NCBI GenBank assembly: GCA_053919585.1
Contig: CM132793.1
Strand: one strand, 5' to 3'
DNA from: Euprymna scolopes
Lineage: Eukaryota
Length of the DNA: 64,000 nucleotides
Shown: one piece after another, positions 1 to 10,829 of the stretch
Layout of the letters: the number at the start of each line of letters is the position of its first letter
Position numbering within the stretch: the stretch's first letter is position 1
Notes under the pieces: model-generated
Database searches by the model: none
What the model was told of the DNA's origin: nothing
What the model saw: only the letters and a program-made list of their open reading frames with translations
Translations under genes and position numbers: made by a program

Positions 1-46
1 TAATGGAGAGGGGACCAGTAGATGATTTCTCTGAAATGGTGCATCA

Positions 47-1017
47 GACAGATGGTGTTTATTTGCTCCCCCACAGAGCAAATTAGGCACAAGGCCGTTT
101 TTAATGTGAGGTAAAAACCAGCTCCCCTTAAAGTAGGCAAAAAGGGGGCACTCTGGTTACCAAAAATAATAATTGTCCCAGCATAGAGGGTTTCCCCTCC
201 ATTGACTGGTACAAATTATCTTAAGTGCAGCATCTGAAGAACAGATGGTATTTATTTGCTCCCCCACTGAGCAAATTAGGCACAAGGCCGTTTTTAATGT
301 GAGGTAAAAACCAGCTCCCCTAAAAGGGGTCACTCTGGTTACCAAAAATAATAATTGTCCCAGTATAGAGGGTTTCCCCTCCATTGACTGGTACAAATTA
401 TCTCAAGTGCAGTATCTGCCGGAACAGATGGTATTTATTTGCTCCCCCACTGAGCAAATTAGGCACAAGGCCGTTTTTAATGTGAGGTAAAAACCAGCTC
501 CCCTAAAAGTAGGCAAAAAGGGGGCACTCTGGTTACCAAAAATAATAATTGTCCCAGTATAGAGGGTTTCCCCTCCATTGACTGGTACAAATTATCTTAA
601 GTGCAGCATCTGCCGGAACAGATGGTATTTATTTGCTCCCCCACTGAGCAAATTAGGCACAAGGCCGTTTTTAATGTGAGGTAAAAACCAGCTCCCCTAC
701 AAGTAGGCAAAAAGGGGGCACTCTGGTTACCAAAAATAATAATTGTCCCAGTATAGAGGGTTTCCCCTCCATTGACTGGTACAAATTATCTTAAGTGCAG
801 CATCTGCCGGAACAGATGGTATTTATTTGCTCCCCCACCGAGCAAATTAGGCACAAGTCCGGTTTTTAATGTGAGGAGTGAAGGGAGGGGGGAGGGGAAA
901 AGGGGACCAGCTCCCGAGAGGTGGGAAATGGGAGCTGGTTAATGGTCAGGCATGTGGGGTTGCCCCCACATCTGGTCTTTGCTAGTCATTGCTAGTCATA
1001 GCCTGCAGCATCTGCCG
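47..1017 (-). repeat. Tandem array of ~190-bp SINE-like units (47-238, 239-421, 422-615, 616-809, divergent 810-1017) joined by the U2 8-mer ATCTGTTC; probably continues off the window start
   Basis: GAACAGAT recurs at 239, 422, 616, 810 and 1018 (GACAGAT at 47). Units 1-4 are near-identical. Unit 5 keeps both ends but has a different middle. Homologous dispersed copies lie at 46440-46627 and 48181-48390. Confidence 0.9.
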
Positions 1018-1041
1018 GAACAGATACTACACTTTGATCTT
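1018..1041 (-). other. 3' target-site duplication: U2 snRNA segment AAGATCAAAGTGTAGTATCTGTTC
   Basis: Identical 24-mer at 8609-8632. Matches about nt 23-46 of invertebrate-type U2 snRNA, including GTAGTA. Confidence 0.88.
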
Positions 1042-1326
1042 GTTTATATATTTTATGTAGAAAGAAAAAATTGAACATAAAAAACGTACAAAAAATTCAA
1101 TTCAACAAAATTAGGCACAAGGCCCTACAAGAAATTGGGAGGGGGAGGGTACAGGGTCTTTTTGACTATGTAACAGATGAGACTTTGAAGTCTTACTCTT
1201 GACTGGCAACATTTACCAAAATACCTCAATCACTCTGTGGATCCTAATCTAACTAATAACCCCAGCGTTCAATGTAAAATTTAACTATGTACACTTGGTA
1301 TATTCATTTCTGTATGTTGTGTGTGC

Positions 1327-1362
<36 letters not shown>

Positions 1363-1859
1363 TATGTGTGAGAAAATAAAGTTCGATTTCATTAGAAAGA
1401 GTTCTTGAATTAATTGGCATAAAATGTTCGTGGAGTGGGAAAAAACTAATGAAAATGTTCATTTCAAAAATAAGGAAAATCTACTAATGTGTTGTTAGTA
1501 AGACCCCCCTGTACTATTCTATGTGGCTAGATCCCCCACTGTTTTCCGGGGAACCGAAAACAAGCAGAGCATCCCTAATGGGGGTTGGGGAAGTCGCCTT
1601 AATGGAGGTGGGAGAAAATAAAGCAACGGATGGAGGGGGTAGGAAGGTGACCTCTGAGTGGGGGGGGATGATCGGGGGCATCAGAAAATAAAGATGAGGA
1701 GCAGGGGGGTTGGGCAGACTCAGAGGTTCTCTAATACCAAAAAATAAAATCAGGAACAGGATCTCATTTGTACCACCAGTCAAGAGTTACTTTACTGAAC
1801 TTATAATGCTAACCTAGGCGGGATGGGTTCCGTAGGACCCAGCACCGCCCATGCCATGC

Positions 1860-4800
1860 CTAAGGAGGGAACACGTATTGAAACTTGGCTCCTCGACGGA
1901 TGCACAAACTAGTGCTGTGCACCCACCTCTTGTCAAATTCCACTCTAGGCAACCTCTTCCAATCGCATCTGATCTTTACTTTAAGCAAATGTTTAAAGTA
2001 AATGATCAGATCCCGATCAGGAACAGATGTCCCTTCGTGGACCAACTTGAGGCGCGCGATCCAAATGGTCATGCGCGCTACTGCTAGGATCGCCAGGAAA
2101 ACCAAACTTTCCTCCCTGGGGAACGGCGGCTCCATGTTGTACACAAAAGTTCCTACGTCGAGATCGAGCAGACACTCGGCATCGATGCGAGCTGTTACCC
2201 CCTCGACGTACCTTAATAGGGGCTGTATCCGGCTGCAACTAAAAAACGCGTGCTCGATTGTTTCGGGCTCGCGTTCGTCACAGCACGGACAGAAGCGGCT
2301 GGTATGTTCTTTATACCGGAAAAGTACGTCGAAGAGGGGCAGCGCATTTCGGACCAGTCGCCAAGTCAGGGAGAATTCCGAGTTATTCAGAATCTCCCGT
2401 CCCGGCGCCCAACGCCATTGAGAACGGACAACCTCCATCGACCATCCCATCCGCCTACAAAGTGGATCCTTCGCGGTCCCCTCCACTAAATCCCGATACA
2501 GTTTCTTCCTTGGCTGATCGAGGACATTGGTCCCCGGCAAAGCTCTAAGAGCGGTTCGGCATTCGGAGAAGAACTTGGACGCCCCCTTCGGTCTACGACG
2601 ACCTTCTACCGAAGGGTTGGGTTTGAGGTTGGGAAACGAGTTCTCAACCACAGGGACCCAAGGAGCGTCTCCTTCAAGCGAACGACCCAGGAAAGCCAAT
2701 CTCTCGGCGTTTCTATGACACAAGAGACTGGGCTGACCCAGGCCTCCCTCGCTCGGATTTTGAACACAGACCTCTCTGCAGACATAATGCTTACCCTCGT
2801 TCCACAAAAGTGAATCGAGGCGCCCTTGTAAGCGGGTTAGTCGTTCTGCAGGGAGAGGAAGTACAGACAAACGGTAAAGGATGAGCGGAAAGACGTATGT
2901 AGCACACGCCCCGCCCGACCCTTCAAGGACAATTTCCTTCCAATCCAAGTCTTTACTGACGATTTGACCTTAGACTGTACTTCCGACCAATTCTTTTCCA
3001 GCTGAAGTCCCGGTCCAAACCAGACACCGAGAATGCGGACCGGTCCATCGGTCCAGCTGAAAATACCTGAAGCGAGTTCACCCCGGTCCAGGCCCCCAAC
3101 CGCAGGCCAACAGACTTGCTACGGTTGAAGATGGCCCCTGTTACTTCTTCGTATCGAGCGAGCGCCTCGACCACCGCTTGAACGTCCGTGAGGCAAGACA
3201 CGAACACGGTGACGTCATCGGCGAACGCGGAAACCCTGGCTCGTGTGCCTCCAGGGAGAGCTATTCCGCGCAGGACTGGTGTAGCCGCCTTGTCCCTTAA
3301 CTTGCGAAGGAGGGGTTCCAACGCCAGGACATACAACAGAGGCGACAGCGGACAACCCTGTCGCACCGACCGAGAGACAGCGAATGACTCCGACAGCTTA
3401 CCGTTGATCTGCACCGCTACCGTCGGCCTGTCATACAGAACAAAGATCCACTTGCGGAAGTCCGGATTAAATCCGGCGGCCTCTAGCACAGATCCTAGGA
3501 ACCGATGGTCGACCCTATCGAATGCCTTGGACTGATCCAAACTGATCAGCGCGGCTTCGGCGTCGTCTTCTGTCCCCTCTATGATCGAGCGTATCAAGTG
3601 CAAATTGTCTTGAATCGATTTCCCCTTCACAGCATAAGTCTGGTCCGGTTCGATCAAGTCAGTGATGACAACCTGCAAGCGATTCGCAAGAATCTTTGCC
3701 AAAATCTTTAACTCTGTGTTTAGCAGAGTCAAGGGCCTAAAATCATCAAAGTTTTCCCTCCCACCATGCCGTTGACCTTTCCTCAGCAATGTGATCACAC
3801 CCTTGGTCACCTGTCCAGGGATGGAACCCTGGGCAAACCAATGGTTGAACATATCCTTCAGAATAGGGACCAACATGGGCGACAGCCTCAAGTAAAACTC
3901 GTAGGGTAAACCATCAAGCCCCGGGGATTTGTTATAGCCGACCTGCTTCAACGCAGTAATGACCTCATGTTCAGTAATAAGACCATCACAGCTAGCTGCC
4001 CGAGCCGCCGTGAGGCGGGGCGAGTCAGCCAAATAGCTGCCAAACTCATCAACCCTGAGTCCGGGTAGTTGGGTGAAGCGCACCGATAGATGCTCCCGAA
4101 ACCCCTCGCAGATCTCCCGAGTCGATACTAAGGGGTGTCCTTCCAGGTTATGTACTTTACGAATGTACCCATCCGAACCGCGCCTTAAAGCAGCCTTACG
4201 CTCAACAGCGTCAACATTCACAGCCTCGTTAGAAACTTTGTTTAACCTAGCCCTAACTACTTGACCTTCATACCGCTCGCTAGCCAAGCGGTTGAGATCT
4301 TGTTTAGCTAGTGCTAACTCTAGGGGGTCCCCCCCTCCACCGCCCGGGTCAGCTTATCCTCTAAACGCTTCTTTGCCTTAGCCTTATCTATCGCGAGGCG
4401 TTGGCTATACTGGACAGAGAAGCGCCTAATTTTGGCCTTAAGACTAACCCACCACTTACTCCCTGTAACCGCCCCCACTAAAGCCCGCTGAATTAGCTCA
4501 GTGACCTTCAACCGGTAGTCCTCCAGCTCCAACAAGGTGCTGTTGAACTTCCAGTATCCGGCCAGTTTAGGCCTAGCACTTAAGCTCAAACGGGCCATAA
4601 CAAGTTTATGGTCCGAGTGTCCTAGCAAGTGGAACGTGGGGCAAGATAGGAAGTCTACATCACCTCTTCTAACTAACATCCGATCCAAGTAAGTGCTTGG
4701 ATGGGAAGGCACTACAGGATGCCACGTCCACATCTCCCGCCCCGGATGATCCAGACGAAATCTGTCGACGAGATCGCACGAGGCCATCAGGTCAGACAGA

Positions 4801-5288
4801 CTGCTGTCACACCACGCCGACCCGCTAGTCCCCCCGACCTTATCTATTTTGGGATCAAGGATTGCATTCCAATCCCCCATTAAAACTAACCGTTCCGGAT
4901 CCACTAAGAAGCCCTCCAACCGTCGAAAAAAGGTTGCCCTCTCTACAGCAGCATTGGGAGCATAAACAGCAACAATCCGAAAAACACTACAATTAACAGC
5001 AACATCAACAACAAGCGCCCGCCCGTCCTCGCCTGCGTGAACAACATTCACCGACGCTGACAGGGTGCGACTCACTAGCAAGGAGATTCCACGACTATAG
5101 GTATTGCCATATGCTGAGTAGACATCGTAATCGTTTACCAGCACCTGACAATCCCCGTCACAAACAAAGTGGGTCTCCTGGATAGCGGCAATATCTACCT
5201 TGAGGGACACCAAGTCTCTCACAACGCGCGAGGCCTTGCTTCGACACCTGATGCCCCTCACATTCAATGTAGCCAAGTTCAAAGACAT
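1860..5288 (-). CDS. ORF2 (APE endonuclease - reverse transcriptase - C-terminal CCHC), split by three 1-nt frameshifts (~4330, ~3070, ~2910)
   Basis: EN motifs LNVRG, IQETH, VYAPN, GDWN, YLDR, SDH, WKFN. RT motifs KSPGLDG, RPLTLLN, LDQSKAFDRVDH, VRQGCPLSP, FADD. The missing piece GIFSWTDGPVRILGVWF...LSLKGRA is in a third frame. C-terminal CPCC-ETIEHAFFSC. Confidence 0.93.
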
Positions 5289-5299
5289 GATCACTTACC

Positions 5300-7875
5300 T
5301 CAAGCACTGTCACAGACGGGTCTGAAATCCTGGGCAGTGAGGACATGGCAGGCCTGGCCAAGGCTGCCGGTAAGTAAATCCGATGAAGGTGATCCATCCT
5401 TGGCCACGCCCCCCACGTCCAGGGGGAAGGTTAGTTTGAGTGCCCTGTATAGCGATGGGTGTACATACATGGGGATTCTACCCTCACATTTAAAGAAAAT
5501 GTTGGTCAGTGAAGGATGGTCCCTATCCACCAGCTGCTGGCCTGGGATCGCATTCTTCGCTGCCTTAATCATTGCCCACATTCCTCCAGTCCTAGCGTCC
5601 TTGTCGACCCTAACGAAAGTGGTCAACAAGGGAGCGTCCTTGAATTTAGTGGGGTCTGTTACTAGGTCTCCACCGACTTTTTCAAAGTTTTTAAGTTTAT
5701 TGTACCGGACCTTCTGTTGTCCTTTAAGGTCCGGAGCCGGTTGGAGAGGGTCTGTTTCACAAATCCTGCTTCCTGGCAGGAAGGGGAGCTTTTTGGTCCG
5801 TTCAGTGCGGACTTTGGGAGTGGGGGAGGGGACCTCTTTTGGTTGATGGGGAGGCTGAGCGCTTGGGGAGGGGGTAGCCTGCTCGTTTTCTTCTTTTTGG
5901 CTCCTGTCACGGGATGAGGGGCGGGAAGAGTTTCTTGGGGCCTTTATAGGAGAGGGGGAAGGTTGTTCGGGTTGCTGGGGTGTTGGGATCACAGGGGGCT
6001 CATCCTGTGTTGTTGTTGCGAGGGAGTCCTTCTCAGTCTCAGTGGGGGTAGGAGGGTTTGCGCGTGTCTTGCGGCTTTTCCTCCTCCTGGCCCTCCTGAT
6101 CTCTGTTGCGCTCAGGGCCATAGAGACTGTTGTTGTCTCTTCCTCTGCCTCTGACGCGGCCTCCTCATCAGATTCTGGTAGTTTCCTCTTGTTTGAGGAG
6201 GAGGGTGTCTGTGTGTCCATTTTCTCCGTCTCGCTTTTCGGTTGTTCTTGGTCTTGGGTGACTGTCTGCAAGGATGGCTGTTTGTTGATCTTGCCTTTCT
6301 TTACGACCGTCACCCAGCCTGTCGGTGCCTCTGGAGGATTTGCGGCCGGCGCGGGAGCAGCGGCTTGATTTGTTGTCACGCTTGTTCCCGCCGCTTTTGT
6401 GGGCTTCTTCCATCCATTCCTCTTTGGACAGTCCTTCGCCATATGCCCTTGTTGTGTGCACAGCCAGCAATGGGGCCTCCTCCCTTCCACTATAAGGGAG
6501 AGTGTCCACTCTCCGAACTTGAGTGTGGCTGGGATGGCGTAGAATCCAGCCTTGTCCAGGACCATCTGTACTTTGTAGTCCCCGGTCATGATGTTTCTTA
6601 ATCCGCGGACCGGGGTGACTTCCTCTACGTCCCCATACTGGCTTAGGATAGCCCCCAGTTGTTTGGCCTCCATATAGCAGGGGACGTTTAGAGCAGAAAC
6701 ATTTGCTCTCCTCTTGTTCATATAGATGGGTTGGAGCTTTATGTTCCTGCTCTGATGGCAGGTCCTGGACAGCCTGACTGCGTCTTCGGAGGTGGGGAGC
6801 AGAACATCCCACTGTGCGTAACTCCTTCTACAGATGTAGTTGGCGGGAATGTTCTGTTCCAGCAACACGTTCATCATGGTGTCCTTGTTGATGCCCGTCA
6901 GACCCCTTGTCTTGGTGTCTGAAGTTATCAGCGAGAGCACTCTTTTCTCCAGAACTTCCACTTGACCCGGGAGGGGTTGGATGTTGTTCCCCTGGGTATA
7001 CTCCTTGTAAGTGGAGTCGAAGAGTGCTCTGTAGTCTTCGGGCGTCAACTTCCCTTGCTGCTCTTTGGGGCCCCATGCCGGTCCTCCATCCTGGTGGGTG
7101 TCAGCTGGACTCGGGTTGGGGGGCGTAGCTGGTGTTGTGGGGCTCTCCCCTGTTATGGGCCTTTTTGGTTTCGGAACTGGCCCGTTACCAGGCAAAGTAG
7201 GCCATTGTGTTTTTGGCGTTGTTTCGTCCTGGCTTTCTTCCTTTGCTGGGTGGCTGTCCCCTTGGGGGATGGAGGTGTCTCCCCTTCTGGTGCCGTGTTC
7301 CCAGCTGGAGCCTTGGTGGGTACTGTCAAGGGTGTCTCTCGTTCCAGCTTGCTTTTGTTACCACTGGCCGGAGAGTCACCCTTTTTCCGTATTTGGTCCT
7401 CTTGGGGAGTGTTGGGGGGCCAATCACTGTCTTCCCCGCCGAATAGTGAGCAGATGGAGGCTATTACATCTTCATCCAGCGCCTCGGTTTGGTCCGCGGT
7501 GCTGTTTTCCTCCTTTTCTGTTGGGGAGTCGCCCTTTGGGGGAGCGGGGGATGGGTTCCCCGGTCTTCCTCCCTTGGTTCTGCCGTCCTGGGGTGCAGCT
7601 GGTTGGCTGGGTTCTGCACTTTCCCCAGCTAGTGAGTTAACGGCAGCTTTTTCCGCTGGGTTGCCCTCGTGGGGAGCGGTTGCAGGTGCTTTTTGGGGGG
7701 TCGCCGCGGGCTGCGGCCCTACCCTCCCGCTTTCTTCCAAGGTCGCCGCGCGCCGGGGCCCTACCTTGTTTCCTGGCGCCGTCTCGCCGGGAGATGCATC
7801 AGCTCCCTCACATAGGGAGTCGTTAGCAGTTGAGATGCTGCGCATTTGGGGTGACGTACCCCTCCTGCCTGGCAT
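5300..7875 (-). CDS. ORF1 (gag-like RNA-binding protein): low-complexity N-terminus, RRM-like region, zinc knuckle, conserved C-terminal domain; one frameshift within 7153-7357
   Basis: ATG at 7875 opens a 240-aa ORF that overlaps the 631-aa ORF (TTG start only; its frame is open to 7357). One missing base joins them. CWLCTQQGHMAKDC is CX2CX4HX4C. NVPCYME...LSQYGDV is typical of Tx1 ORF1. Confidence 0.85.
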
Positions 7876-8019
7876 CGTGGCGGTTGCACTAGCCGCTGGC
7901 GCGGACCAAAGTGTAGTGGGGGAAAAGAAAACCCAGGGGAATGGAGGGGGAGGAGGGGGAGGAGCGGACTTTGAAGAAATTAGAGTTTTTGACTTCCCCT
8001 CACGGGGATGTCGGGTTAG

Positions 8020-8330
8020 CAGCTCAGATCCCCCCGTGAGGGGGGAGAGCAGAGAAGAAAGACGCAGTGGGTGCTAGCGGGTCAGAGTGCCGCGTCGCAA
8101 TTAAGAGAGAGAGGGGATAGGCATCCCTGCCCGCAGAGGGGAGCAGAAACGAAGCACCCGCCCTACCCCACGTCACCCTACCCACTAACTTACCCCAACA
8201 GAAGCGAGAAAGAGAACCCTGTCTGCTCGATCCACTGGGAGAGCAGCGAAGATAGACAAAGTTTGGGCCTGGCAGGTCAGAGTGCTGCTCAGGCAATTAA
8301 GTGTGGAGAAATTAGACCATCCCAGTCTCG
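8020..8330 (-). repeat. Two diverged ~195-bp monomers in the LINE 5'UTR
   Basis: GAGAGCAG-GAAGA-AGAC at 8045 and 8239; GGTCAGAGTGC...GCAATTAAG at 8080 and 8275 (offsets 194-195). Confidence 0.6.
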
Positions 8331-8608
8331 AGAAGTGAGACCGAAACGAAGAAAAAACAACATGCAAAAACAACAAATGAAAAAAAAGAAGGTCTCAACT
8401 ACCAGCGATAGTGGTGTTGGTCCCGAGATTCTAGTCTCCCAAAAGAGGGGATCGGTTTCCGGGTCCAAGCTACCACAAATGTGGAGTCGGTCCTCTAGGT
8501 CCTGACTCCCCAAAGGAGGGGGTCGGTCCTTGCTAACAAAGGTTAGTAAGAAAAAACACCTTAACCTAGTCCGAAAGCCCGGTGGTGGGTCAAGTTTAGT
8601 AACTGAGA

Positions 8609-8694
8609 GAACAGATACTACACTTTGATCTTGTTTATATATTTTATTGAGAAAGAAAAAATTGAACATATTGGCCAAAAGGCCAAGTAAGCGT
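8609..8694 (-). pseudogene. U2: U2 snRNA 5' fragment (about nt 1-46) interrupted by a 38-nt insert; includes the 5' TSD (8609-8632)
   Basis: The minus strand reads ACGCTTACTTGGCCTTTTGGCCAA-[38 nt]-AAGATCAAAGTGTAGTATCTGTTC versus U2 ATCGCTTCTCGGCCTTTTGGCTAAGATCAAAGTGTAGTATCTGTTC. No 3' half of U2 is seen in the window. Confidence 0.85.
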
Positions 8695-8754: not shown

Positions 8755-9200
8755 TATATTTTAAGAGGGGAAAGGGAATGTGGAGTAATTCCTGTAAATG
8801 GCTGAAGCAGTTTACGATCTTAAAAATACATAATTTCACATAAATTTTAAAGGAAGGGTGGATACGGAGTCAGGCCCGGAAATAGCTAAAGCAGTTTATG
8901 ATCTCAAAATTAATTTATTTCACATGCATTTTTAACAGTGAGGAAGGAGGTACATGGTGTCAGTCTGGGAAATTGCTGAAAGATTTTACGAGCTCAAAAT
9001 TACTTTATTTCATACCTATTTTTAAGGGAGGGGGCGATATGGAGTCAGTCCCAGAAATAGCTAAAGCAGTTTGCGATCTCAAAGTTTCTTTATTTTTTAC
9101 CTATTTTTAAGATGGAGATGGAATGATATGGAATCAGTCCCGGAAATGGTTGTAGAATTTTACGATTTCATATTTATTTTATTTCATATAAATTTTTTAA
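8755..9200. repeat. ~85-bp tandem repeat, about 5 diverged copies
   Basis: Recurrent GGAGTCAG-CCCGGAAATAGCTAAAGCAGTTT-CGATCTCAAA. Confidence 0.8.
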
Positions 9201-9229
9201 GACAGGGGGAAGGGAAATAAATAAGGGAT

Positions 9230-9760
9230 TATACTAAAATAATAACATTATTTACAAAGCCATTCTTAATATGGGGTATTTTTTTGACTATTCTGTACTT
9301 TCACCTAACAATTTAATAAATGAAAAAAAAACTGACTTATGGAATACGGACTGTACTGAAATAATAACGTTATAATTTAGAAAGGCATCCTTAATATAGG
9401 GAGAGGAGGGCGTTTTTGTAAACTATTCTGTACTTTCACCTAACAATTTATTAAATAAGAAACTGATATACGGAATACGGATTGTGCTGAAATAATAACG
9501 TAAATGTTTAAAAAGCCATTCTTAATATAGAGAGGGTATGGTTTTTGTTTTTTTTTAACTAATCTGTACTTTCACCTAACAACTTAATAAATAAAAACCT
9601 GAAATACGGAATACGGACCTACTGAAATAATAACGTTGATGTTTAGAAAGCCATTCCTTATATGGGGAGAGGAAGGCAGTTTTTAAATTATTCTGTACTT
9701 TTACCTAACAACTTATTAAATAAGAAACTGACATACGGGATACGGACCGTGCTAAAATAA
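9230..9760. repeat. ~120-125-bp tandem repeat, about 4 copies; single dispersed copy near 61875-61980
   Basis: Recurrent GAAATAATAACG...AAAGCCATTCTTAATAT...CTGTACTTTCACCTAACAA...GGAATACGGA. Confidence 0.8.
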
Positions 9761-10829
9761 TATTTACATATTTAATTGTAAAAAATCAGCTGAGTCCTAA
9801 TCTAGAAATGATATAATTTTGCTTAAAATCATAGTTGTGGTGGTGTTTGTGGTGGGAAAAGAAATACAGTAATGACGAATTTTCTGTTGAAGCAAGCGTT
9901 ACCTAATCACTAACAAGACAATATATTTATGTATTTAGTTGAAAATTCTAATGATTCATCTTCTAACAGTGAATTCAATTTTCTTAAAATTATGATGACC
10001 TTGGTGGGAAGAGAAATTAGTTCATATATGTTGTACAATACCTGTCAAGAGTACGTCAAATTGTTTCAGATATTTATTTACATTACCCATCAGAGGGTAA
10101 GAAAATATTTAAACATATTTTCTGTACATTATCCGTCCAAGGAATTGTAAAATTATTTAATATTCGTGCTGTTAATTACAAGTCCAAGGGAAGTTAAAAT
10201 TATTTTATACATAATTTATGTAATTCACGTCCTTGATTAGGTAAAATATTGTTTTACTCGAGATAGCGAATGATATATAGACATCAAAATTCATCTATCC
10301 GAGAAGAATAACAGATATGTTCAAAGTCAACTTCATTTTTCTCATGGTTTTATACGGTCCTGAGCAACGCCGGGTGGGTCTGCTAGTATTACATAAAAAA
10401 AGTTGAGAAAATGGGATTAATTGCATTAACGAAAATAAAAATGAGATCTGACTTAATTGACATTTCGAAATACTTAATGGAGTTTCTAATTATGCTGGCT
10501 AATTATTAATATTGTTTTACAATCTGTAAAGATAATATCAGGACACATTTCAAGAACTAGATCTCTTAACTAAGTAGACATCTTCGCGTGTTATAGTAAA
10601 CACACTCACAATATAATTAGATAACTGAAGTGATGGACTTAGACTTAAAACATCTGTTCATAACGATACCAGGTAAGTAATATATGATTAATAACGCATG
10701 TTCACGGGATTCTCGCGCTTATATACAAAAGAAGTTCTCAAAAGACTTACTCTATAAAGCGGATTTTTGCGTACAACATCATCAATTTAAATTTAATTCT
10801 ACATCTTTAGGAGTTTTCATTCCATCATT

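What the first reader, a model, noticed from the sequence alone, without database searches (positions are those of the whole stretch)
47..8694. Candidate system: U2-targeting Tx1 LINE plus a U2-headed SINE that borrows its tail and supplies new target sites
Seen: on the minus strand the order is U2 5' end, a 38-nt piece, the U2 24-mer, the full Tx1 LINE, the U2 24-mer again, then five ~190-bp units each ending at ATCTGTTC. The same unit is dispersed at 46440-46627 directly behind a U2 nt ~20-47 head and at 48181-48390 with a clean TSD. Unit and LINE 3'UTR share a 17-mer. Known: Tx1-clade Keno and the Utopia group target U2 genes, and snRNA-headed SINEs (SINEU) have been described from crocodilians. 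Inference: this invertebrate has a U2-headed SINE mobilised by a Tx1 LINE. Each SINE copy disperses the U2 target motif, creating landing pads for LINE and SINE away from real U2 genes. I know of no description of this in an invertebrate but could not search.
Basis: partly seen in the sequence, partly recalled or inferred. Interest (0 to 1): 0.9.

Follow-up and report, generated by a model that had tools for sequence, protein, structure and literature searches.

The report
U2-headed SINEs nested with U2-homing LINE
This stretch of a mollusc genome is a pile-up of a dead LINE and short dependent elements that all carry a piece of U2 spliceosomal RNA at their front end and have inserted into each other's U2 pieces, a variant of a system so far described only in crocodilians and vertebrate-type U2-homing LINEs.

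Summary
On the minus strand, a 24-nt U2 5' piece is followed by a 37-nt stub of LINE tail. Next comes U2 nt 22-46, then a 7.6-kb frameshifted L1/Tx1-type LINE, U2 nt 22-46 again, and six short units.

New points:
- The short unit belongs to a very abundant dispersed family. Most of its copies carry the whole U2 5' part (about nt 1-50), not only the 24-mer.
- The LINE therefore most likely sits in the head of such an element, not in a U2 gene.
- There are two classes of 3' junction. In class I the tail joins CAAGATC at U2 nt 22; this class covers four LINE junctions and SINE tails in public contigs. In class II the tail joins ATCTGTTC at nt 39; this class covers every junction in the array and is the published Keno/Utopia site.
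- The array joins three body types, so it is not only tandem duplication.
- The two dispersed copies at 46 kb and 48 kb are distant subfamilies with an extra 3' module.

The closest known systems are Keno LINEs and the crocodilian SINEU/Tx1-Mar pair, so this is a new variant of a known kind. The scan has already noted the same family on other pieces of this genome.

The parts
8671..8694 (-). U2-derived nt 1-24, the 5' part of the head that was split by the insertions. It has CTTGG, the form seen in SINE heads, where the U2-like sequence in L001 has CTCGG.
   Evidence: SINE head consensus comes from the loose end at 1042.
8634..8670 (-). 37-nt stub: a 5'-truncated copy, or a deletion remnant, of the LINE 3' end. 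It is joined to U2 nt 22 with CAA duplicated (a 3-bp TSD).
   Evidence: Matches 1079-1043 at 35 of 37 positions; the whole 62-nt repeat matches at 60 of 62.
8609..8633 (-). U2 nt 22-46 (CAAGATCAAAGTGTAGTATCTGTTC), the upstream copy. It serves as the leader of the LINE.
   Evidence: Rfam U2 hit at 8538-8662, 25.2 bits, E 0.004.
1043..8608 (-). Full-length but dead L1/Tx1-type LINE, 7,566 nt. The 5'UTR runs to about 7875. ORF1 carries a CCHC knuckle and one frameshift (8073-7156 and 7357-5303). ORF2 lies in three frames: APE 5294-4323, RT 4353-2956, zf-RVT 2969-1863. The 3'UTR is 1862-1043.
   Evidence: Pfam; frame map; PDB L1 ORF2p, E 3e-45 for RT and 1e-12 for EN; best Swiss-Prot fold match is Xenopus Tx1 at 33% identity.
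1107..1123 (-). 3'UTR motif GGCCTTGTGCCTAATTT, shared with the SINE tail and conserved in the 85%-identical LINE copies of L002.
1018..1042 (-). U2 nt 22-46, the downstream copy. It is the 3' part of the split head and runs straight into the body of unit 1.
   Evidence: Most public contigs have U2 nt 1-21 directly upstream of this 25-mer (loose end at 1042).
810..1017 (-). Unit 1: a SINE of the most abundant body type, with a tail ending AAATAAATACC (818), followed by ATCTGTTC (817-810).
   Evidence: (highest depth, 1-3.4 million summed words).
48..809 (-). Units 2-5 (809-616, 615-422, 421-239, 238-48): a second body type. Each is preceded only by U2 nt 39-46 and ends ...AAATA(A/C)ACC.
   Evidence: TRF period 194, 98% match.
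1..47 (-). Start of a sixth unit of a third type (CTGATGCACC...), cut by the window edge.
   Evidence: Its start resembles that of the 46-kb copy.
46441..46633 (-). Dispersed distant subfamily copy with a U2 head (about nt 3-47, internal deletion), and a further 3' module beyond 46441.
48133..48362 (-). Dispersed distant subfamily copy. Its head is 5'-truncated and degenerate. It has a 48-nt extra 3' module and is flanked by the 9-bp TSD ACTAATCAC.

Best explanation
The region is a nest made by site-directed retrotransposition into U2-derived sequence.

A very abundant family of short non-coding retroposons in this mollusc has three parts: a head copied from U2 snRNA (about nt 1-50), a variable body, and a tail of about 65 nt. 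The tail contains a motif also found in the 3'UTR of a Tx1-type LINE family and ends in an A/T-rich run. The LINE family carries the same U2 leader in front of its 5'UTR.

The LINE endonuclease is inferred to nick U2-like sequence, after which target-primed reverse transcription joins the element tail to the target. In this LINE family the joint falls at U2 nt 21|22 (tail|CAAGATC). In the SINE array it falls at nt 38|39 (tail|ATCTGTTC), which is the published Keno/Utopia site.

Every full-length copy brings U2 nt 1-46 with it. Either it was transcribed together with the U2 sequence it sat in, or its 5' end was joined by homology. Each copy is therefore a new target, and nests grow head-to-tail at their 5' end.

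At this locus, units 6 to 1 piled up first. A full LINE and a 37-nt stub of the same family then entered the one intact head at nt 22. The LINE has since decayed, with at least three frameshifts.

Shown: the anatomy, the recurrent junction positions, the abundance of the family, the presence of the head in most copies, and the shared motif.

Inferred: which LINE moves the SINE, the endonuclease specificity, the co-transcriptional origin of the head, and the order of events.
For: Anatomy and repeats.

LINE type:
- APE + RVT_1 + zf-RVT domains and a CCHC ORF1.
- The nearest solved structure is human L1 ORF2p.
- The nearest reviewed protein is Xenopus Tx1 at 33% identity, against 28-30% for mammalian L1.

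U2 association of the LINE in independent copies:
- In L001, U2 nt 1-44 abuts the LINE 5' end. Rfam U2 scores 47.5 bits there, above the gathering score.
- L002 is LINE-25mer-LINE-25mer-LINE.
- A related family also lies in tandem (gene map).

Class I junction (tail|CAAGATC):
- The window LINE, the stub and both L002 junctions.
- SINE tail ...AAATAAATACC joined to CAAGATC in 19, 12 and 21 contigs of three runs (joint 1042->818).

SINE head and abundance:
- The loose end at 1042 reads ...TTCTTGGCCTTTTGGC in 111 contigs.
- Summed depth is 5e4 to 3.4e6 over the units, against about 570 on the sixth-unit start at 1-47.

Class II junction: it joins three body types here and equals the published Keno 3' target TCTGTTCTTATCAGTTTAAT (PMC6136364; nt 39 in PMC4640811).

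Polarity of private changes: U5 about 6, U4 3 plus a deletion, U2 and U3 0-1.

No U2 gene is present in the 64-kb window.
Against: - Two different junction positions (nt 22 and nt 39) are not explained by one endonuclease. No LINE copy with a nt-39 junction was seen.
- The tail similarity is limited to a 17-18-nt motif plus an A/T-rich end. The motif lies at different distances from the 3' end in the two elements: 63 nt in the LINE and 24 nt in the SINE.
- Units 2 and 3 differ at only one base, so at least that pair could be a tandem duplication.
- The window ends inside the array, so a U2 3' part downstream cannot be excluded.
- The first 8 nt of the 8694-8671 piece look more like canonical U2 than like the SINE head consensus.
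- Transcription is not shown. RNA-labelled runs hold the sequence, but that may be DNA or read-through.
- Placement in the Tx1 clade rests on a 3-5 point identity margin, not on a tree.
Confidence: 0.7

Rival explanations
1. Units 2-5 are a small satellite. One inserted unit was multiplied by unequal crossing-over or replication slippage, so the array says nothing about repeated site-specific insertion.
For: TRF reports period 194 with 98% match. Units 2 and 3 differ at one base. All internal junctions are identical, and these truncated heads lack the nt-22 site.
Against: The same junction (tail|ATCTGT(T)C) also joins unit 1 to unit 2 and unit 5 to unit 6, and those units have different bodies. 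Private changes rise from the 5' end to the 3' end. Unchecked notes from other windows of this genome report arrays with the same junction at other loci.
Confidence: 0.25
2. The head-to-tail joints are made in a single integration by template switching. The reverse transcriptase reaches the 5' end of one (often 5'-shortened) element RNA and jumps to the 3' end of another. No endonuclease preference for U2 sequence is then needed for the arrays.
For: Public contigs show the SINE tail followed by several different head positions. The head start CTTTTCTTGGCC follows the tail in 109 contigs, with low agreement (0.44). Other contigs show nt 22 and about nt 26-28 (tables 5, 5c and 7). Template jumps were invoked for the repeated addition of snRNA heads in SINEU (PMC4494074).
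Against: The stub at 8670-8634 splits a head cleanly with a 3-bp duplication, which is the mark of an insertion. Four LINE junctions fall at the same base. Unit 1 carries about 7 differences from its family majority while units 2-3 carry none, which fits different ages rather than one event.
Confidence: 0.2
3. The target was a true U2 gene, or a copy within a U2 cluster, and this is an ordinary Keno-type insertion site. The LINE and the short non-autonomous elements sit in a U2 gene whose 3' part lies beyond base 1 of the window.
For: The first bases of 8694-8671 (ACGCTTAC..) are close to canonical U2. The class II junction is the published Keno site. The window ends inside the array. The last 47 bases contain TCAGAGAAATCATCT, which faintly resembles U2 nt 50-65.
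Against: The 25-mer at 1042-1018 runs directly into SINE body in the arrangement that most genomic copies have. There is no U2 gene or U2 3' part in the 64-kb window. The head has CTTGG as in SINE heads, not CTCGG.
Confidence: 0.15

Closest known systems
Keno (Tx1-clade LINEs specific for U2 snRNA genes; Kojima & Fujiwara 2004, as cited in PMC4494074, PMC4640811 and PMC6136364)
   Same: An APE-type endonuclease LINE of the L1/Tx1 group, flanked by U2 sequence on both sides and found in tandem. The array junction in this window (|ATCTGTTC) is the published Keno 3' target.
   Different: In all four junctions seen, this LINE family's own 3' joint is at U2 nt 22, which is 17 nt upstream of the Keno site. 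The target here is a U2-derived head of a SINE rather than a U2 gene. The host is a mollusc; Keno has been reported from vertebrates, lancelet and Hydra. The phylogenetic position was not tested.
SINEU with Tx1-Mar partners in crocodilians (Kojima 2015, PMC4494074)
   Same: Short non-coding retroposons with a U2-derived head. They contain oligo-T runs that argue against Pol III transcription. A Tx1-type LINE carries the same U2 head, and SINE and LINE share target preference.
   Different: SINEU ends in poly(A), shares no tail with a LINE, and targets a Mariner transposon. Here the tail ends ...AAATAAATACC, shares a 17-nt motif with the LINE 3'UTR, and the target is the U2 head itself, so the elements pile into each other. 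Copy number appears far higher and the host phylum is different, so an independent origin is likely.
Utopia (NeSL-clade, restriction-like endonuclease, U2-specific; PMC4640811)
   Same: The same U2 site as the array junction (downstream U2 starts at nt 39). Tandem insertions occur, and TSD length varies by lineage.
   Different: Utopia encodes a PD-(D/E)xK endonuclease. This LINE has an APE endonuclease.
R2 and its co-transcribed non-autonomous derivatives (target-promoter dependence; discussed in PMC4494074)
   Same: A site-specific LINE that probably relies on transcription from its target, with short dependants using the same site.
   Different: R2 removes the upstream target RNA. Here the upstream U2 part stays on the copies and is carried to new places.
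Automatic class 'SINE/U' in the Octopus vulgaris repeat annotation (PMC13282606, table and supplement)
   Same: A cephalopod repeat library in which one family was machine-labelled as U-type SINE (369 kb). A further 250 Mb of SINEs in that library are unclassified.
   Different: Only a table entry exists, with no description of head, tail, partner or target. I could not check whether it is this family.

Membership tests
L1/Tx1-group LINE | ORF2 with an N-terminal APE endonuclease, a reverse transcriptase and a C-terminal zinc-binding domain; ORF1 with a CCHC knuckle | tested here: met
   Pfam: Exo_endo_phos 9e-15, RVT_1 3e-31, zf-RVT 3e-8, zf-CCHC 0.0016 (below the curated cut-off). PDB: L1 ORF2p, E 3e-45 for RT and 1e-12 for EN.
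Tx1 clade | RT groups with Tx1 rather than L1 in a phylogeny | tested here: inconclusive
   No reference set was available for a tree. The best Swiss-Prot fold and sequence match is Xenopus Tx1 (33% identity over 398 aa), against L1 at 28-30% (model pLDDT 86). The margin is small.
Keno | Copies flanked by U2 snRNA sequence | tested here: met
   The window, L001 and L002 at two junctions.
Keno | 3' junction at |TCTGTTCTTATCAG (U2 nt 38/39) | tested here: not met
   All four LINE 3' junctions read ...TA(T/A)A(A)|CAAGATCAAAG, which is nt 22. An alternative reading, in which the LINE's own 3' end includes U2 nt 22-38, cannot be excluded.
Keno | RT clusters with Keno families | not testable with these tools
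   No Repbase sequences are held.
SINEU | 5' head derived from U1 or U2 snRNA | tested here: met
   U2 nt 1-21 lies upstream of the 25-mer in most public contigs. The 46-kb copy aligns to Rfam U2 positions 1-47.
SINEU | 3' poly(A) tail | tested here: not met
   The units end AAATAAATACC. The dispersed copies end in a further non-poly(A) module.
SINEU | Shares target preference with a Tx1 LINE that can carry the same snRNA head | tested here: met
   SINE tail|CAAGATC joints are seen in contigs, and the same joint is seen in LINE copies. The LINE leader equals the SINE head over nt 22-46, and over nt 1-44 in L001.
Classical SINE (Pol III, internal promoter) | Head from tRNA, 7SL or 5S with A/B boxes, and no internal terminator | tested here: not met
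   Rfam gives no tRNA, 7SL or 5S hit in 1-1100. A T5 run (ATTATTTTTGG) lies inside the unit.
LINE-SINE pair with a common tail | SINE 3' region homologous to the partner LINE 3'UTR | tested here: inconclusive
   A 17-nt exact match, conserved across diverged LINE copies, plus an A/T-rich end. The rest of the tail does not align.

The most novel reading that the evidence does not exclude
The U2 head is not a promoter. It is a portable landing pad left on the RNA by co-transcription with the target. By carrying its own target, the LINE/SINE pair escaped dependence on the few real U2 genes, and this self-seeding drove the SINE to very high copy number in this mollusc lineage. The same process would explain where the snRNA heads of the crocodilian SINEU and Tx1-Mar elements came from.
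Probability: 0.35. Interest if true: 0.75.

Novelty: new variant of a known kind. Interest (0 to 1): 0.58.

Why it matters
Site-specific LINEs are thought to be limited by the number of their target genes, and U2 genes are few. If the elements carry a working copy of their own target, that limit falls away, and head-to-tail nests and copy-number bursts follow naturally.

The system would also make two open questions from the SINEU paper testable in a living lineage: how snRNA heads are acquired, and how such promoter-less SINEs are transcribed.

For genome annotation, it gives a rule for splitting the large 'unclassified SINE' fraction of cephalopod-type genomes.

Tried and rejected
1. SINE body compared with the LINE 5'UTR beyond the 46-nt leader. 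By eye they share an Sm-like site and a CCCC/GGGG hairpin, but local alignment of six units against four LINE copies gave z scores from -0.6 to 1.6 against shuffles. Rejected.

2. U2 origin of the unit body. Rfam at E<=10 gave no U2 hit on a headless unit. The Sm-like stretches add only about 2 bits in the 46-kb copy. Only nt 1 to about 50 is solidly U2.

3. Tail hairpins. The UUUGCUC/GAGCAAA stem is predicted, and it changes to GUUUC/GAAAC in the 48-kb copy, but folding energies are no better than shuffles (z -0.3 to -2.1).

4. More LINE copies. Five further look-ups returned gene maps but no DNA because the sample files were too large. The ORF1 search found only the L001 copy, and the C-terminal search found nothing above 53% identity.

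5. The first structure model, from 20 sequences, had pLDDT 40 and was not used.

6. I looked for a TSD of 7 nt or more around the 46-kb copy and found none.

7. ESM Atlas names were generic.

Full report
**Observation**

Read on the minus strand (exact coordinates), the stretch has this order:
- 8694-8671: ACGCTTACTTGGCCTTTTGGCCAA, which is U2 snRNA nt 1-24.
- 8670-8634: a 37-nt A/T-rich piece.
- 8633-8609: CAAGATCAAAGTGTAGTATCTGTTC, which is U2 nt 22-46.
- 8608-1043: a 7,566-nt LINE.
- 1042-1018: the same 25-mer again.
- Short units at 1017-810, 809-616, 615-422, 421-239 and 238-48, and the start of a sixth unit at 47-1.

The 37-nt piece plus the 25-mer upstream of the LINE repeats the last 62 nt at the LINE's 3' side at 60 of 62 positions. 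The '38-nt piece' is therefore a stub of the LINE tail. The core 22-mer occurs three times in the window against 0.01 expected. The unit junction sequence occurs four times against none expected. Rfam finds no complete U2 gene in the 64-kb window, only sub-threshold U2 hits on these pieces.

**The LINE**

Pfam finds Exo_endo_phos, RVT_1 and zf-RVT in three consecutive reading frames, and a CCHC knuckle in ORF1. The frame map shows two frameshifts in ORF2 and one in ORF1, so this copy is dead.

The nearest solved structures are human L1 ORF2p, with E 3e-45 for the RT and 1e-12 for the endonuclease. R2 is far behind.

A model built on 57 sequences (pLDDT 86) matches Xenopus Tx1 best among reviewed proteins. 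Identity is 33% over 398 residues, against 28-30% for mammalian L1. This fits the Tx1 clade but is not a tree.

The closest named homologue comes from a cuttlefish, and runs labelled as mollusc hold the sequence.

**Independent copies of the LINE**

Two public contigs carry the same family (91% and 85% identity in ORF2).
- In L001, U2 nt 1-44 abuts the LINE 5' end. Rfam scores that start as U2 above its gathering score (47.5 bits). The alignment runs on into the 5'UTR, including an Sm-like AUUUUUUG, but most of the score comes from the first 46 nt.
- L002 is a tandem of LINE, 25-mer, LINE, 25-mer, LINE.
- A related family (64% identity) also lies in tandem on its contig (gene map).

In all four 3' junctions seen, the A/T-rich LINE end is followed by CAAGATCAAAG, which is U2 nt 22. 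The stub gives the cleanest picture: head nt 1-24, stub, then nt 22 onward. That is a 3-bp duplication (CAA) at nt 21|22 to 24|25.

The 25-mer is perfectly conserved in every copy while the adjacent LINE tail has diverged with indels. This fits target-derived sequence that is renewed at each insertion. It fits less well with an old part of the 3'UTR, although that reading cannot be excluded.

**The short unit**

I laid Logan contigs of four public runs of the same organism on 1-1400: two labelled DNA, one labelled RNA and one poly(A) RNA-seq run.
- Summed word depth over the units is 5e4 to 3.4e6. It is about 570 on the last 47 bases and 4e3 to 4e5 on the LINE 3'UTR. Tens of thousands of distinct contig pieces were laid. 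The unit is therefore a very abundant dispersed repeat. Unit 1, which has a different body, is the commonest type.
- The best-supported loose end lies just upstream of the 25-mer. In element orientation it reads ...ATTTTCTTGGCCTTTTGGC before CAAGATC, in 111 contigs of one run. Most copies therefore carry U2 nt 1-21 as well. The head is the whole U2 5' part, not only a 24-mer.
- Joints show the 194-nt type behind a full head too (613->1018).
- The unit holds a T5 run and gives no tRNA, 7SL or 5S match. A Pol III internal promoter is therefore unlikely, as in SINEU.

Given this, the simplest reading of the window is that 8694-8671 and 1042-810 are the two halves of one SINE whose head was split at nt 22 by the LINE and the stub. 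The head has CTTGG as in the SINE consensus, whereas the U2-like sequence in L001 has CTCGG. That supports the 'landing pad' idea at this locus. The window ends inside the array, so a real U2 gene as the original target is not excluded.

**Shared tail**

The units and the LINE 3'UTR share GGCCTTGTGCCTAATTT exactly. The motif is kept in the diverged L002 copies and, in altered form, in the distant SINE copies. Both tails end in an A/T-rich run (AAATATATAAA in the LINE, AAATAAATACC in the SINE). Nothing else aligns, and the motif lies at different distances from the 3' end in the two elements. A partner relation is plausible but not proven.

**Two junction classes**

Class I is tail|CAAGATC at nt 22. 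It covers the LINE junctions above and SINE tails in public contigs. The joint 1042->818 is present in 19, 12 and 21 contigs of three runs, with minor variants at about nt 26-28.

Class II is ...AAATA(A/C)ACC|ATCTGT(T)C at nt 39. It covers all five junctions of the window array.

Class II is exactly the published 3' target of Keno and Utopia (TCTGTTCTTATCAGTTTAAT, 37 nt into U2, PMC6136364; 'nucleotide 39', PMC4640811). It joins three different body types here: unit 1 to unit 2, units 2-5 to each other, and unit 5 to unit 6. It is therefore not one junction copied by tandem duplication.

Private changes rise from the 5' units (0-1) to unit 4 (3 plus a deletion) and unit 5 (about 6). This fits growth at the 5' end by insertion into the one intact head, but four units are few. 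Units 2 and 3 could still be a recent duplication.

I cannot explain both classes with one endonuclease. A second, canonical Keno-type LINE in this genome is the simplest guess, and it is untested. Template switching between element RNAs is a real rival for part of the joints. Contigs also show the tail followed by the very start of a head (109 contigs, low agreement).

**The two dispersed copies**

They are related to the unit (nhmmer E 1e-5 and 5e-12) but are different subfamilies.
- The 46-kb copy has a head from about U2 nt 3 to 47 with an internal deletion. No TSD was found.
- The 48-kb copy has a degenerate, 5'-truncated head and is flanked by ACTAATCAC. This TSD encloses 48 nt beyond the unit's homology.

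Both copies share this extra 3' module (CCTAGGTC...), which the array units lack. They show that U2-headed elements are mobile and modular. They do not show that this LINE moved them.

**Comparison with what is known**

Keno is a Tx1-clade, U2-specific LINE known from vertebrates, lancelet and Hydra (PMC4494074, PMC4640811).

SINEU elements have U1 or U2 heads, contain oligo-T, and are known only from crocodilians. They are mobilised by Tx1-Mar LINEs, which cluster with Keno, and some of those LINEs carry the same U2 head. However, SINEU elements end in poly(A), share no tail with a LINE, and target a Mariner transposon (PMC4494074).

The present system combines the two. U2-headed SINEs and a U2-led Tx1-type LINE still go for U2 sequence, so the heads themselves are hit.

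Full-text searches found no description of this in molluscs. The only trace is a machine label 'SINE/U' for one family in an Octopus vulgaris repeat table.

I rate it a new variant of a known kind. Notes from this scan show that the same family and the same idea were already recorded on several other pieces of this genome. Those notes are unchecked leads. The recurrence of the nt-39 array junction at other loci comes only from them.

**What failed**

- Similarity between the SINE body and the LINE 5'UTR beyond the leader is not significant.
- The unit body is not detectably U2.
- Hairpin energies are not better than shuffles.
- DNA of further LINE relatives could not be fetched.
- Transcription is not shown by the RNA-labelled runs.

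Noticed in passing
window 5300-7875 compared with L001 805-3207 and L002 6000-7400: The LINE copies are mosaics. Against L001, the 5'UTR is 81% identical and ORF2 is 91% identical, but the ORF1 region hardly aligns (114 nt at 72%; protein 49% identity over 30% of the length). ORF1 modules seem to have been exchanged between lineages.
   Followed up: partly
L001 47-174; window 8608-8460: The LINE 5'UTR behind the 46-nt leader aligns weakly to the rest of the Rfam U2 model, with an Sm-like AUUUUUUG and two stem-loops. The LINE leader may be a whole, decayed U2 copy.
   Followed up: partly
window 46380-46440 and 48133-48180: The two dispersed SINE relatives share an extra 3' module of about 48 nt containing CCTAGGTC. 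In the 48-kb copy it ends in the hairpin TCGTCG-GCTG-CGACGA. This is probably the tail for a different LINE partner.
   Followed up: no
window 8781-9209 and 9279-9762: Tandem repeats of 85-89 bp (4.8 copies, 70% match) and 135 bp (3.6 copies) lie directly upstream of the nest. Their nature was not examined.
   Followed up: no
window 8687-8671 and SINE heads in public contigs: In the SINE head, U2 CTCGGCC has become CTTGGCC. This makes a perfect 7-bp hairpin, CTTGGCC-TTTT-GGCCAAG, whose 3' arm (GGCCAAG) spans the nt-21|22 junction.
   Followed up: no
runs X19 and X20: RNA runs of a second, related organism hold about 40% of the sampled words of window 1-3000. A close relative therefore carries near-identical LINE or SINE sequence.
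   Followed up: no
window 42037-42590 and 43011-43943: Two long arrays of 35-37-bp units (TCTGTAACGATTAAATTTGAAATA... and TTTAGTTTGAAATAGCA...) appear in the TRF output. They seem unrelated to the finding.
   Followed up: no
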